From assembly GCA_964035545.1 (NCBI GenBank), contig OZ037765.1, forward strand, positions 31,371,504 to 31,435,503: 64,000 nt of DNA, in the 5' to 3' direction. The notes beneath the pieces were generated by a model that was not told where the DNA came from, did no database searches, and saw only the letters and a program-made list of their open reading frames with translations. Of this stretch, positions 21,153-25,018 are shown in pieces. Source of the DNA: Bugula neritina. Its lineage: Eukaryota; Animalia; Bryozoa. The translations under genes and the position numbers were made by a program. The first letter of the stretch is position 1, and each line of letters opens with the position of its first letter.

Positions 21153-24100
21153 TTAAGCTGTTTTCTTGGGAAGAGACTTTTCTTTCTCAATACGCTGGTC
21201 AAACTGTTGCTGATATCTGGCAAAGCTCTCCGCCACAATCAGTGGAAAGGCTAAACTAGCATCTGCACATAGCTGTAACAAGTCACCAATACAAGTTAAC
21301 CACACGACATATACAGTCCTTGCTGCCATATTGTTCAGTTGAACAAAAATGCCATTGTGATGAGAACTTTTTTTGTTCTTCTTTTCCAACAAGTTTTTAA
21401 CATATAGCTGCTGCAAGACCAGTTTCCCTAATGGCGGTGTGCTGAGATATATATTGACCACAACAAATTCAGCCATAAAATCTACTGCATATTTACTGTT
21501 GTGTTGACTGTACATCAATATTCAGAATTATTATTCAAAGTTTAAAATATTAATGTTTTATGGTTTCGGATGACAGAAATACTTTCACATATGGCATCTA
21601 AAATATTAAATGCTTTTTAGTACAAGACTAGAAGTCTAACCACGAACTCACCTTGACAGGTGTGGCGTCCATCTTTATTTTACCCCAAGACACTGCTTCG
21701 TCTGGTGGAGCTCCGGAGTCACTACCATCAAACTCTTGTCCCGTGTTTACATTCACAGAGAAATCAGCTCCATTTCTCTAAACACAAGAAGACCTTTACA
21801 AATCTCCTTATATTCAAGTATGCAGAAAGTAACAGGAACATATTATACTGGTATCTTGAATGAATTATGTAGAGAGGAAGTAATTTCTTCACACATTTCT
21901 CTCCCACCATTAGATTAGCATTGTTTACATGATGTTTCACCAGACCACCTCCCAGAATTATCATCCCACTATGTTTGGCTGTCACAGCCTGGTTGTTCAT
22001 TTTTCGGACATCTGAAAATATTTCAATAATAACTGCAAGACTTGACCCTAAAAATAATGTACGGCTGCAAGACTCACTGCTAAAGCGTAATGTACCATAG
22101 CAAGGATTGCTCACTAATATGCTCTGTAATAATGAATTATAGAAATATGTAGTCAACAAAACATAAGCAAGAAATAATATTTATACATAGGAAACTTTCT
22201 TATGGACAAAAAGTCGGCTAGGTTTAGGGGGCTTTCCATTGTCTGTAAACCCACCTTCTACAATATCTAAAACCAGACCAGAGGTTTTGTGCGAATGGAA
22301 ATATAGCATGTCACCTATTGAGCCATCAGTTAGGGCGGGGCTAAATACTGGGATGTTATTCTACAAACAGAAATGCTAAGTTGACAAAAAATATAAAATA
22401 TATACCTGATTTTAAACAGGGCATCATATGCACCTACATTATAGATATTAATTGTGTTTCAGAATAATACCAACGGACTTATTTGCAGAAAACATAAAAA
22501 TTGGAATAAAGCAAATGCTACAAGCATGCTGGCATTTTTGTGCAAGCTAAAACATTTCAATATACTTGAAAATGTAATATAAATAATGAGCTTGTATTAA
22601 GTCTACTGATCGTGACATATTATGTAAACATACCTGGTAGCACCAGTAGTAGATGCTGCTTTTATCATTGATCTCTTTGCCTAGTCGGTGAATCACTTTC
22701 GAAGGTGTCCATTTCATCCCCTACAATTACAAAATCATATTTTAAATAAGAAAACCACAATACTGCTAACAAAATGAGTTTCTGTAAATGAATATATTCT
22801 TGCAGCTTTACGATGGATAAACGGCTCAAAGTTTCTAGTATTTCAGCAAAATACTGATAACATTACACAGAAAGTATAGTAAAACACAATATGGGTGATT
22901 GTCAAAAAACGACTAAGAGCAATATGATGTCATACACTGAGAATTTGATGACTCATCTACCTGGGAGTTCTGTTCCTCCAACATCTGGTCGAGAATTGGC
23001 ATTAACCAGTTTTCAAACTTAACATAATTATCATTTGGTACAAGCATGTTACCTGGAAACACAACACTAATTATATAGACTTACAAAACTTAAACTCAGC
23101 TATTTAATATTTTCTAGTCTATCACTTGGACCAGAAAATATTAAAAGACAAACTTTTTCAGCCAACTAGCATTTTATGCATTTCTGAAAACTTAAGATTG
23201 ACTAATGCTTATAGACATATACATTCTACAACACTATAGAAAAAAATGTCTGAAAAAGCCATTATTACCTATTAATAATATTCATTCGATAGCACTAATA
23301 ATTTTCTATAAAACCTAATTTATTTCTCTGATGCCCCCATCATGTATTTTCATGTGAAGAAAATTATACGAAACAGTTCAAGTTTGTTAATGATATAAAG
23401 TAATATGTGAAAGAAGCCGTTCAAGTTGCCCACCAAAATATGCCTGTTGTTAGGTAGTGTTTCTATGGCAACATATGACCTTCACATTTTCAAAACAAAT
23501 TAATGTAATGACCACATACTAAAATGATAATTTGTCAGCCTACCAACTCTGTTTACTCCTTTCTTGCGCAGCTCTTTCCCAGACAAATTAAATGCACCGA
23601 TGTAGGAATTCCCTAAACATTTGATGAAATCTTCTTCAATTCCACCTGCAGTTACAACCAGACAGTCAACCTATAAACACATATCAATCTACATCTCTAC
23701 ATATGTAATGAAATGGCAATCCATTAACAAGTTTAACCAGTCATTGGTTGAATTGACTATCAATACATAATATGACTGGACTATTATAATATATAAGTTA
23801 ACTGCATTGTTAATTTAAGGTGACAATATTATTGCAAAGGCTTATTTACTTTTGGGCTATATTTAAATGGCATAGGATTGCCAGACATCATGGAGAAAGA
23901 TGCACACTGAAACACCCACCATGTTATGTTCCACCAGGTATCGGATTGTCTCCCTCACACCACATGACACTAGATTGCTAGTCAAACCCAGAAATATTGT
24001 ACAGTTGGACAACCTCCGGTTAGTGTGACTGTTGAAATCTGTAATATCTTCAACTAGAACCTCTAGCTTTTTATTTATCTAGAAAATTCAATGCATGGCA

Positions 24101-25018
24101 ATTATTTTATGCAGCAAAACTATCAATGAGCTTTATAAAACAGAGTTTTGTGATATGTAACTATATAACTGTGTAGGTGAGAGTGGCCTGTGTACTGGTG
24201 GGAGTGATTTGTGTATTGGTGAAAGTGGTTGTGTACTGGTGGGAGTGGCCTGTGTACTGGTGGGAGTGGCCTGTGTACTGGTAGGAGCGGCCTGTGTACT
24301 GGTGGGAGTGGCCTGTGTACTGGTGGGAGTTGCCTGTGAACTAGAAGACACTTTTTACCCCCCCTACAGACCCACCATAATAATGTTACCATACCTACCA
24401 TGCGTATTATTTCTTGAACTGCAAGACCAAATTTGGTTGCTGAGAATCCACAGGTAGCATAAGACGATAGCAAGGCATGGTGATCAATACCATTGTTAAA
24501 ATCATAGCCTTTGACAACCTAAAACATTCAATAGATAAAATATGTTCTTTGAAGTTCTGATTGATCTCACCTGATTTAAGATCAAAAGAAAATTCACAAG
24601 GAAACAAATTGTTTTATGAACATCAATTTTTGACAAATAAAATATATTTTCTTAGATTTTCTTTAGCAAAAATAAACTATTCTAATGTCTAATATTGTTA
24701 TATTAGGCAACCAGTAAAAGCATTTTATTTATTTAGGTTATTCACTATTTTTAGTTTGAGCAAGTCGAAATTTAAGTTTCTTCGGCACAGTGTTACATAG
24801 ACTTCTAAATATTAAGATTTTTGAACTTGAGTTTGAGTTTTGACTACTGGAAATGCTTTACTACAAACTCATCTTTTTTCATGCTACCATCTTTACTGAA
24901 ACTACAAAGGTGAATCATACTTTACCGTGGCATTAGTACTGTCAAAGTCACTTTTAGCAAGTACAGCTTCTGCAGCAATAGATGGCACATCAGCGCTAGC
25001 TTTGGGAGTTGAAGCCAT
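21153..25018 (-). CDS. DHPS: Deoxyhypusine synthase paralogue, copy A (intact, divergent), 377 aa; exons 25018-24926, 24518-24399, 24078-23920, 23670-23544, 23052-22961, 22720-22634, 22360-22255, 22011-21908, 21777-21652, 21272-21153
   Basis: Ten in-phase GT-AG exons with lengths identical to copy C and no stops. Motifs [38 protein letters not shown] and [21 protein letters not shown] (catalytic Lys present). Confidence 0.93.
24178..24345. repeat. 21-bp minisatellite (CTGGTGGGAGTGGCCTGTGTA) in DHPS-A intron 2
   Basis: About 7-8 units. Orthologous arrays are in DHPS-B (44713-44945) and DHPS-C (59175-59230). Confidence 0.9.

What the first reader, a model, noticed from the sequence alone, without database searches (positions are those of the whole stretch)
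21153..25018. Intact second deoxyhypusine synthase with homospermidine-synthase-like substitutions: candidate new animal polyamine enzyme
Seen: copy A has the same 10 exons and 377-aa frame as copy C and keeps the catalytic set (WGK lysine, KHH, TDG..GD, EED, DEA). Exon 4 shows many synonymous differences from C, so the copy is not brand new, yet it has no stop or frameshift. Where they differ, C has the DHS consensus and A deviates: ATN->ATK, NRIG->NRVG, NYCKFED->NYVKFEN, DGSLGD->DGSIGD, FHSY->FHSH, EDIRKMN->EDVRKMN, HHVSN->HHVNN, GARPDE->GAPPDE, YAD->CAD. Established: DHPS is normally single-copy in animals. In plants, DHS duplicates repeatedly became homospermidine synthase (HSS, the entry enzyme of pyrrolizidine-alkaloid synthesis) by losing eIF5A modification, with the motif after DIV[QE]D changing from IxxxN to VxxxD. 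Copy A has VxxxN, half of that signature; C has IxxxN. From memory (unverified here), some plant HSS also have a hydrophobic residue at the NYC cysteine and DGSIGD. Inference: A may be a convergently evolving HSS-like aminobutyl transferase or an eIF5A-independent paralogue. It was the only gene of the block retained in both duplicates.
Basis: partly seen in the sequence, partly recalled or inferred. Interest (0 to 1): 0.85.

Follow-up and report, generated by a model that had tools for sequence, protein, structure and literature searches.

The report
Second, fast-evolved deoxyhypusine synthase gene
This invertebrate (probably a Bugula bryozoan) carries a second intact, transcribed copy of the enzyme that activates translation factor eIF5A; the copy changed quickly after an old tandem duplication and is now conserved, but nothing in its sequence shows it has become a plant-style homospermidine synthase.

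Summary
Copy A (21153-25018, minus strand) and copy C (56027-59739) each have 10 GT-AG exons and encode 377 aa. They differ at 93 nt and 32 aa, and all nine listed substitutions are present.

New here:
- A third copy, B, is a truncated A-type pseudogene split by a retrotransposon.
- These are the only DHS loci in the 216-Mb genome, and eIF5A is single-copy.
- The A/C duplication is old (dS 0.5-0.85 in exons 4, 7 and 10). Other exons have been homogenised by gene conversion.
- C is the slow copy. Against its orthologue on a metagenome contig, omega is about 0.01.
- A took nearly all the replacements (omega about 0.27; not neutral, p = 6e-4).
- Spliced contigs from four RNA-type runs use all nine A junctions and carry A-type residues. 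They differ from A almost only synonymously (omega about 0.035).

So A is a live, constrained gene, not a decaying one.

The homospermidine-synthase (HSS) reading is weak:
- In plants the decisive change is N to D. A keeps that N.
- I to V is functionally silent in plants, and VxxxN occurs in ordinary animal DHS.
- A keeps every catalytic residue and all tested eIF5A-interface residues except Y250 (H).

Most likely A is a working DHS paralogue. Altered acceptor use is possible but untested. The scan had not noted this before.

The parts
21153..25018 (-). Copy A: intact 10-exon deoxyhypusine synthase gene, 377 aa. Exons: 25018-24926, 24518-24399, 24078-23920, 23670-23544, 23052-22961, 22720-22634, 22360-22255, 22011-21908, 21777-21652, 21272-21153.
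   Evidence: Exons match PF01916. Spliced contigs of four runs show all nine junctions (table 5).
24432..24434 (-). Codon 60 of A: K (N in C). K occurs in 0 of 190 DHS sequences.
   Evidence: The RNA contigs keep K through a synonymous AAA>AAG change.
23009..23023 (-). Codons 177-181 of A: V177 (C in 185/190) and N181 (D in 175/190). They lie just after the eIF5A-interface residues N173 and Y176.
   Evidence: PMC10042821. The RNA contigs show no other letter at these sites.
22289..22291 (-). Codon 250 of A: H. Other DHS have Y (167/190) or F (18/190); H occurs in 0/190. Y250 is an eIF5A-interface residue in human DHS.
   Evidence: PMC10042821.
21995..22009 (-). Codons 263-267 of A: V-R-K-M-N, the 'VxxxN' motif. 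C has I-R-K-M-N.
   Evidence: N267 is N in 189/190 sequences. V263 occurs in 8/190, all apparently ordinary DHS.
21923..21925 (-). Codon 291 of A: AAC (N), against TCA (S) in C and in L013. All three bases differ, in an exon that is otherwise 95% identical.
   Evidence: N occurs in 1/190 sequences.
21706..21708 (-). Codon 320 of A: P (R in 163/190; P in 0/190), in the active-site loop GA[R/P]PDEAVSWGK.
   Evidence: The RNA contigs carry the A letter here in all four runs.
21679..21681 (-). Codon 329 of A: the catalytic lysine of WGK, retained.
56027..59739 (-). Copy C: intact 10-exon DHS gene, 377 aa, the slowly evolving copy. Exons: 59739-59647, 59405-59286, 59079-58921, 58341-58215, 57763-57672, 57498-57412, 57302-57197, 56969-56866, 56590-56465, 56146-56027.
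   Evidence: Metagenome contig L013 is collinear with C through its introns and about 1.6 kb of 3' flank. C against L013 gives dS 0.256 and dN 0.0029.
44494..45619 (-). Copy B, 5' part: exon 1, exon 2 and the first 118 nt of exon 3. A-type, 96.6-97.5% identical to the A exons.
30756..32069 (-). Copy B, middle part: the last 46 nt of exon 3 and exons 4-6. A-type. The exon-4 donor is AT instead of GT. Replacements include C144R, N164I and K178T. Exons 7-10 were not found.
32070..44493 (.). Insertion of about 12.4 kb splitting exon 3 of B. Five bases of exon 3 are present on both sides.
   Evidence: Contents: a retrotransposon gag ORF at 32380-33051; an integrase zinc-binding ORF at 42813-44042; 783-nt inverted repeats at 33062-33844 and 42020-42799; and a strongly G-skewed block at about 38-40 kb.
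23875..24227 (-). Example of a gene-conversion tract between A and C. It covers exon 3 and flanking intron and is 93.5% identical to 58876-59228. Most other intron sequence does not align.

Best explanation
Copy A is a functional second deoxyhypusine synthase gene.

History (inferred from the sequence comparisons):
- An old tandem duplication produced the C lineage and the A lineage. The A lineage later spawned B, which is now a pseudogene.
- C kept the ancestral protein almost unchanged.
- A went through a phase of faster protein change: about 15 replacements in the last 148 codons alone.
- Some of A's changes are around the substrate tunnel and the eIF5A docking surface.
- A was then held under strong purifying selection.
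- Occasional gene conversion has kept several exons of A and C nearly identical.

What is shown:
- A is transcribed and spliced at all nine introns.
- In three of the four RNA-type runs only A-type DHS contigs could be recognised. In X2 the A-type contigs carried most of the depth.

Likely mechanism (inferred):
- A keeps every residue known to bind NAD and spermidine, and the catalytic lysine. It should therefore still carry out NAD-dependent cleavage of spermidine and transfer of the aminobutyl group.
- It keeps N267 and the tested eIF5A-interface residues N173, Y176, S240, M244, F247 and L295. Only one eIF5A gene exists in the genome.
- The most likely acceptor is therefore still eIF5A Lys50.
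- A could act as homotetramers or in mixed tetramers with C.
- Its kinetics, regulation or side-activity with free polyamines may have been tuned.
For: - Intact model with canonical splice sites.
- DHS matches in the whole genome lie only in this window.
- Spliced contigs in four runs from four studies show all nine A junctions. In exons 4 and 7 they differ from A at 3/127 and 2/106 positions, where A and C differ at 24 and 15.
- No C letter was read at the codons for L79, V177, N181, I241, H250, N291 or P320.
- Differences between the A assembly and the RNA contigs: 27 synonymous and 5 non-synonymous. For the main variant it is 16-18 synonymous against 2 non-synonymous, omega about 0.035, p about 1e-9 against neutrality.
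- Three-taxon counts over codons 230-377, as synonymous/non-synonymous: A branch 15/14, C branch 10/1, L013 branch 11/0. Fisher p = 6e-4. The A branch against neutral expectation gives p = 6e-4.
- Tree: A and C are sisters (support 1.0). The A branch is 0.068 and the C branch 0.013.
- Catalytic and interface residues are retained (PMC10042821).
- eIF5A is single-copy with a canonical STSKTGKHGHAKV loop.
Against: - No enzyme assay exists.
- Y250H, S291N and R320P are unseen or almost unseen among 190 DHS sequences. Y250 is part of the eIF5A interface, and Y250A nearly abolished measurable eIF5A binding in human DHS, although hypusination still occurred (PMC10042821). Reduced eIF5A use is therefore not excluded.
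- The runs laid are labelled RNA only by guess, and only Logan contigs were available. Expression levels and the A:C ratio are therefore not measured.
- The RNA came from animals about 3% different from the assembly.
- Expression of C was seen only as one minor C-type exon2-exon3 contig in run X2.
- The branch-wise omega rests on 148 codons and one outgroup contig. Gene conversion blurs the branch assignments.
Confidence: 0.6

Rival explanations
1. A is a neofunctionalised aminobutyl transferase. It has weakened or lost eIF5A modification. It now mainly transfers the aminobutyl group of spermidine to a free amine, making homospermidine or a related polyamine, as plant HSS does.
For: - The history is asymmetric: fast change followed by conservation, as expected after a change of function.
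- Unique replacements sit at the eIF5A-interface residue Y250 and in or near the tunnel and active-site loop: C177V, D181N, S291N (three base changes in one codon) and R320P (PMC10042821).
- The conserved copy C remains available for the essential eIF5A job.
- DHS is intrinsically promiscuous and makes homospermidine as a side reaction (abstracts of PMC7780104 and PMC13625781).
Against: - A keeps N267, the residue whose change to D removes eIF5A use in plant HSS.
- I263V is functionally silent in plants and occurs in ordinary animal DHS.
- The third motif site (252) is T in A and S in C, not H.
- The other tested interface residues are unchanged: N173, Y176, S240, M244, F247 and L295.
- Y250A human DHS still hypusinates.
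- A-type is the main DHS transcript type recognised, which fits a housekeeping role at least as well.
- No homospermidine-derived chemistry is known to me for this animal (my knowledge, not tested).
Confidence: 0.17
2. A and C are obligate or preferred partners in mixed tetramers. One subunit is specialised for regulation or stability, as in the trypanosomatid DHSc/DHSp pair.
For: - DHS active sites are built across the dimer interface.
- Heterotetramers of DHS paralogues are documented in Trypanosoma brucei (PMC3663545; PDB 6DFT).
- 'Paralog interference' has been argued for plant DHS/HSS (PMC9295680).
- Both A-type and C-type spliced contigs occur in run X2.
Against: - Both copies keep the full catalytic set, unlike the dead trypanosomatid subunit.
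- Co-expression in the same cells is not shown.
- No interface analysis was possible, because the spliced protein could not be sent to the structure tools.
Confidence: 0.12
3. A is an incipient pseudogene drifting under relaxed constraint.
For: - The A branch has a higher non-synonymous rate than C.
- A has replacements at near-invariant sites.
- Its sister copy B is already dead.
Against: - No stop, frameshift or splice-site defect.
- Transcribed and correctly spliced in four runs.
- Omega on the A branch is 0.27, significantly below 1.
- Differences from the RNA-source animals are almost all synonymous, at omega about 0.035.
- The derived residues K60, V177, N181, H250, N291 and P320 are shared between the assembly and the RNA contigs.
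Confidence: 0.03
4. A and C are two haplotypes, or an assembly artefact, and not two loci.
For: - Marine invertebrates are highly heterozygous.
- Some A/C differences appear as variants among the RNA contigs.
Against: - The two copies lie 31 kb apart on one long contig, with unique sequence and a third copy between them.
- Introns are mostly unalignable and differ in length.
- Exon 4 has dS 0.85.
- C has its own orthologue with conserved flank.
- A DNA run holds 91% of the sampled A words.
Confidence: 0.03

Closest known systems
Eukaryotic deoxyhypusine synthase (DHS/DHPS; Pfam PF01916; human structures 1DHS, 6XXJ; eIF5A complex 8A0E)
   Same: - About 65-69% identity to animal DHS over the full length.
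- Same length.
- All NAD-binding, spermidine-binding and catalytic residues are present, including K329, H288 and W327.
- Most eIF5A-interface residues are retained.
   Different: - It is a second, lineage-specific copy that evolved about five times faster than its sister.
- Three residues are not seen in 190 homologues (K60, H250, P320), and N291 is seen once.
- Y250 is an eIF5A-interface residue in human DHS.
Plant homospermidine synthase (HSS), recruited repeatedly from DHS duplicates
   Same: - It arose by duplication of DHS.
- The duplicate evolves faster while the other copy stays conserved.
- V at the first motif position.
   Different: - It lacks the decisive N-to-D change and the N-to-H change of the 266H-277VxxxD281 motif.
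- No activity data exist.
- It is the main DHS transcript type recognised here, where plant HSS is a pathway-specific extra enzyme.
Trypanosomatid DHSc/DHSp heterotetramer (PDB 6DFT; PMC3663545)
   Same: Two DHS paralogues in one genome that could assemble into mixed tetramers.
   Different: - In trypanosomatids one subunit is catalytically dead and the other impaired. Here both keep the complete catalytic set.
- Heteromer formation was not tested here.

Membership tests
Deoxyhypusine synthase (PF01916, eukaryotic DHS) | Sequence membership in the DS family over the whole length | tested here: met
   Exons match PF01916 above the curated cut-off and human DHS chains. The joined CDS, built locally, is 65-69% identical to animal DHS.
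Deoxyhypusine synthase (PF01916, eukaryotic DHS) | Catalytic lysine (K329), plus H288, W327, E323, D316, D313 and D243, and the NAD-binding residues N106, T131-G133, E137, D238, G283-G284 and D342 | tested here: met
   All are identical in A, C and mouse DHS in the 192-row alignment.
Deoxyhypusine synthase (PF01916, eukaryotic DHS) | eIF5A docking residues defined by the human complex (Q83, N173, Y176, S240, M244, F247, Y250, I271, F272, L295) | tested here: inconclusive
   - N173, Y176, S240, M244, F247 and L295 are kept.
- Y250 is H in A only.
- Positions 83, 271 and 272 differ from mammals in both A and C (T, V, T).
Sources; PMC10042821.
Deoxyhypusine synthase (PF01916, eukaryotic DHS) | Deoxyhypusination of eIF5A Lys50 | not testable with these tools
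   This needs a recombinant enzyme assay. The genome has one eIF5A gene with a canonical loop.
Plant-type homospermidine synthase | HSS motif 266H-277VxxxD281, with N-to-D as the change that removes eIF5A use | tested here: not met
   A has T252, V263 and N267. Only the functionally silent V is shared (PMC9295680; PMC11848025).
Plant-type homospermidine synthase | Preferential aminobutyl transfer to putrescine, with loss of eIF5A activity | not testable with these tools
   Needs an enzyme assay and metabolite analysis.
Regulatory (dead) DHS paralogue of the trypanosomatid type | Loss of the catalytic lysine or of NAD/spermidine-binding residues in one paralogue | tested here: not met
   Both A and C keep all of these residues.

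The most novel reading that the evidence does not exclude
A is an animal aminobutyl transferase whose acceptor preference has shifted away from eIF5A, towards putrescine or another amine. On this reading the changes at Y250H, C177V, D181N, S291N and R320P did the work. That route differs from the plant N-to-D change. It would be an independent animal origin of a homospermidine-type enzyme from DHS.
Probability: 0.15. Interest if true: 0.8.

Novelty: new member of a known kind. Interest (0 to 1): 0.45.

Why it matters
DHS is essential and is usually treated as a single-copy gene in animals. Its duplicates are best known from plants, where they repeatedly founded alkaloid biosynthesis, and from trypanosomatids, where they form an obligate heteromer. 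I found no paper on an animal DHS paralogue in the library searched.

This locus offers an animal pair with a clear asymmetric history. One copy is frozen. The other changed at the substrate tunnel and the eIF5A surface, and was then conserved and expressed. There is only one eIF5A to act on.

Expressing the two proteins side by side would show how much change the eIF5A-docking surface tolerates. It would also show whether promiscuous polyamine chemistry has been exploited in an animal.

If A turns out to be an ordinary DHS, the locus is still a tidy example of tandem duplication, gene conversion and pseudogenisation.

Tried and rejected
- **Exon-row alignment A1.** I aligned the 20 exon references with one full-length DHS, meant as a profile query. 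MAFFT scattered the fragments, so A1 was not used for any search.
- **Metagenome scan with exon 3.** It gave only distant eukaryotic DHS genes (L014-L024, 53-74% identity). No further contigs of this lineage turned up.
- **Protein search with the C exon-4 frame.** Three unrelated short fragments.
- **Representative search with exon 9.** Mostly fragments. It was useful only for P0014, P0093 and P0085.
- **5' leader of the RNA contigs.** The letters beyond 25042 were sought in the window and in the genome, and were not found.
- **IQ-TREE.** It could not run multi-threaded and timed out single-threaded. FastTree was used instead.
- **Tajima relative-rate tests with distant outgroups.** These showed only a weak trend: 9-13 A-unique sites against 3-7 C-unique sites, p 0.02-0.47. 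The close outgroup L013 is much more informative.
- **Enrichment of A's changes in the HDX-protected regions of human DHS.** I counted 7 of 12 by hand, against 37% of the protein length. I did not test this formally and do not treat it as significant.
- **Left out on the operators' rule.** The joined (spliced) A and C proteins have no reference. They were never sent to a search, family, atlas or structure tool. They were built and compared only inside local scripts from window coordinates. There is therefore no structure prediction, no fold search and no full-length database search with A itself.
- It was replaced by coordinate-based code.
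Full report
**What is in the window**

Three deoxyhypusine synthase (DHS) loci lie on the minus strand.
- Copy A spans 25018-21153 and copy C spans 59739-56027.
- Each has ten exons of identical lengths and phases, GT-AG at all nine introns, and a 377-codon frame ending in one stop.
- Individual exons match Pfam PF01916 and human DHS chains in the PDB.
- A whole-genome scan with PF01916 finds DHS exons only in this window. The genome is 216 Mb in 321 contigs, and the window is C1:31371504-31435503.
- A and C differ at 93 of 1134 nt and 32 of 377 aa.

**A third copy, B**

- Exon 1, exon 2 and the first 118 nt of exon 3 lie at 45619-44494.
- The last 46 nt of exon 3 and exons 4-6 lie at 32069-30756.
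- The B exons are 96-100% identical to A, and exon 4 is clearly A-type: 6 differences from A against 30 from C.
- About 12.4 kb separates the two parts of B, with five bases of exon 3 repeated on both sides.
- That 12.4 kb holds retrotransposon gag and integrase ORFs and 783-nt inverted repeats.
- The exon-4 donor of B is AT. Several conserved residues are replaced. Exons 7-10 were not found.
- B is therefore a dead offshoot of the A lineage.
- Self-comparison shows no duplicated block beyond the genes themselves.

**Age of the duplication and gene conversion**

- Synonymous divergence between A and C is very uneven: 0.85 in exon 4, 0.63 in exon 7 and 0.54 in exon 10, against 0.04-0.25 in the other exons.
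- The heterogeneity is significant (p = 7e-8).
- Around exons 3 and 9 the similarity runs into the flanking introns (93-96%). Most other intron sequence does not align, and intron lengths differ.
- The simplest reading is an old duplication with later short gene-conversion tracts.

**Which copy is derived**

In a MAFFT alignment of 190 DHS sequences (animals, fungi, protists and a few plants) from two database searches:

| A replacement | Ancestral residue among 190 | A's residue among 190 |
|---|---|---|
| N60K | N 84, S 88 | K 0 |
| T146S | T 185 | S 3 |
| I166V | I 182 | V 1 |
| C177V | C 185 | V 2 |
| D181N | D 175 | N 6 |
| Y250H | Y 167, F 18 | H 0 |
| R320P | R 163 | P 0 |
| Y340C | Y 160 | C 14 |
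| T354S | T 185 | S 3 |

- C carries the common residue at each of these sites.
- C is derived only at variable sites, such as L79P in the linker.
- Both copies share five lineage-specific deviations: Q57S, A144G, L169M, K226(Q/H) and P253S.
- A and C are sisters on a FastTree phylogeny (support 1.0), on a long common stem of 0.37. The A branch is 0.068 and the C branch 0.013.

**A close outgroup**

- A 67-aa metagenome protein (P0085) led to contig L013, a 3055-nt JGI metagenome contig.
- L013 is collinear with C through part of exon 7, exons 8-10, their introns and about 1.6 kb of 3' flank. I take it as the C orthologue of a related species.
- Over 148 codons, C against L013 gives dS 0.256 but dN 0.0029, a single amino-acid difference, so omega is about 0.01.
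- A against C gives dS 0.30 and dN 0.048. A against L013 gives dS 0.31 and dN 0.046.
- Site-by-site assignment, as synonymous/non-synonymous:
  - A branch: 15/14
  - C branch: 10/1
  - L013 branch: 11/0
- A differs from C and L013 combined (Fisher p = 6e-4).
- A also has far fewer non-synonymous changes than neutrality predicts (p = 6e-4), with omega about 0.27.
- S291N is notable. All three bases of the codon differ (TCA to AAC) in an exon that is otherwise 95% identical.

**Transcription**

- One run search and one read-laying run were allowed.
- Four runs from four studies were laid on 21100-25100. All were available only as Logan contigs and are labelled RNA by guess.
- Contigs cover exons only.
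- They join exactly at all nine predicted junctions: 21272/21652, 21777/21908, 22011/22255, 22360/22634, 22720/22961, 23052/23544, 23670/23920, 24078/24399 and 24518/24926.
- An 809-nt contig spans exons 2-8. It differs from A at 3 of 127 nt in exon 4 and 2 of 106 nt in exon 7, where A and C differ at 24 and 15. The transcript is therefore A-type.
- No C letter was read at the codons for L79, V177, N181, I241, H250, N291 or P320.
- The contigs are about 97% identical to A, so the RNA comes from somewhat different animals.
- Of the 32 listed differences, 27 are synonymous.
- The main variant has 16-18 synonymous differences against 2 non-synonymous ones (A9T, S354T). That gives omega about 0.035 and p about 1e-9 against neutrality.
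- K60 is kept through a synonymous AAA>AAG change.
- The A-type protein, with its unusual residues, is therefore conserved between diverged animals.
- In run X2, a minor spliced exon2-exon3 contig (depth 54 of 215) carries the C-type residues N60 and S54. C-type mRNA therefore also exists there.

Limits of this evidence:
- Contigs cannot give expression levels.
- Variants below 10% are not listed.
- C-type exons 4, 7 and 10 are too different from A to have been laid.
- The A:C ratio therefore remains unknown.

**The acceptor**

- The genome has one eIF5A locus, at C3:23368315-23369045.
- Its hypusination loop is the canonical STSKTGKHGHAKV.

**Comparison with what is known**

Plant HSS:
- The plant HSS motif is 266H-277VxxxD281.
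- In Ipomoea alba HSS, and in Parsonsia HSS mutants, the N/D position decides whether eIF5A is aminobutylated.
- The I/V position has no clear effect, and VxxxN enzymes keep DHS activity (PMC9295680; PMC11848025).
- At the equivalent positions 252/263/267, A has T/V/N and C has S/I/N.
- N267 is N in 189 of 190 sequences.
- V263 with N267 occurs in ordinary DHS of Pomacea canaliculata, Ciona savignyi, Owenia fusiformis and Lytechinus. The position is L in 45 of the 104 vertebrate sequences.
- The 'half signature' therefore carries no weight.

Human eIF5A-DHS complex (PMC10042821):
- Interface residues are Q83, N173, Y176, S240, M244, F247, Y250, I271, F272 and L295.
- Alanine mutants of interface residues largely lose measurable eIF5A binding, but Y250A still hypusinates.
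- A keeps all of these that C keeps, except Y250.
- C177V and D181N lie a few residues after N173 and Y176. From my own reading of the structure, not checked here, they are on the same helix.
- S291N lies between H288 and L295.
- R320P lies in the loop that carries D316, E323, W327 and K329.

These placements fit tuning of acceptor handling. They fit tolerated change after duplication equally well. The tools cannot separate the two.

**Verdict**

- A is a genuine, functional, transcribed DHS paralogue with an asymmetric history.
- It meets the sequence definition of DHS and fails the sequence definition of plant-type HSS.
- I rate continued eIF5A modification, alone or in mixed tetramers with C, as most likely (about 0.6). 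A shifted acceptor preference gets about 0.15-0.2.
- Pseudogene and artefact readings are essentially excluded.

**Organism**

- Genome size, a 'symbiont metagenome' run and the JGI contig suggested a Bugula-type bryozoan to me.
- An earlier AI note on this genome says the same.
- No tool output names the organism, so this remains an inference.

- The spliced A and C proteins have no reference. They were never sent to search, family, atlas or structure tools.
- All work on the joined CDS was done in local scripts from window coordinates.

Noticed in passing
window 30756-45619: Copy B is a truncated A-type DHS pseudogene (exons 1-6 only). Its exon 3 is split by about 12.4 kb, with a 5-nt repeat at the break. 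The exon-4 donor is mutated (AT).
   Followed up: yes
window 32070-44493: The inserted DNA has a retrotransposon gag ORF (32380-33051) and an integrase zinc-binding ORF (42813-44042). It also has 783-nt inverted repeats, 97% identical (33062-33844 and 42020-42799). At about 38-40 kb there is a block with 47% GC and GC skew 0.82 that is open in several frames.
   Followed up: partly
window 24126-24360 (A intron 2); also 59130-59280 (C) and about 44700-44950 (B): A 21-nt minisatellite lies in intron 2 of all three copies. It reads as PPVHRPL repeats in one frame. The array is longest in A.
   Followed up: no
window 25042-25044: RNA-type contigs of three runs leave the genome sequence at 25042, just after an AG on the gene strand. 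They continue for 68-154 nt with a leader found neither in the window nor in the genome (up to 2-3 mismatches). This could be a distant or diverged 5' UTR exon, or a strain difference.
   Followed up: partly
window 22047: An upstream in-frame AG acceptor would add 12 codons to exon 8 of A. The contigs use 22011, not this site.
   Followed up: yes
window 48663-49481: A tandem array of repeats about 58 nt long, 88-92% identical between copies.
   Followed up: no
window 1430-3017: Minus-strand ORFs match the DUS3L CCCH zinc finger and the dihydrouridine synthase domain. This is a neighbouring DUS3L-like gene.
   Followed up: no
P0238 (Paramormyrops kingsleyae 'deoxyhypusine synthase-like'): This is the only one of 190 DHS sequences with D where the rest have the near-invariant N267 (IxxxD). 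That is the change that abolishes eIF5A use in plant HSS. It is a fish DHS-like gene worth a look.
   Followed up: no
P0292 and P0340 (Batillaria attramentaria; contigs of the same length, 749,489 nt): This snail has two DHS genes. P0292 deviates at S105A, N106S, I166T, C177R and M244I, partly the same positions as copy A. P0340 is canonical.
   Followed up: no
G000:C3:23368315-23369045: eIF5A is single-copy in this genome and has a canonical hypusination loop.
   Followed up: yes
That implies more than one ornithine decarboxylase gene, so polyamine genes may be duplicated more widely in this genome.
   Followed up: no
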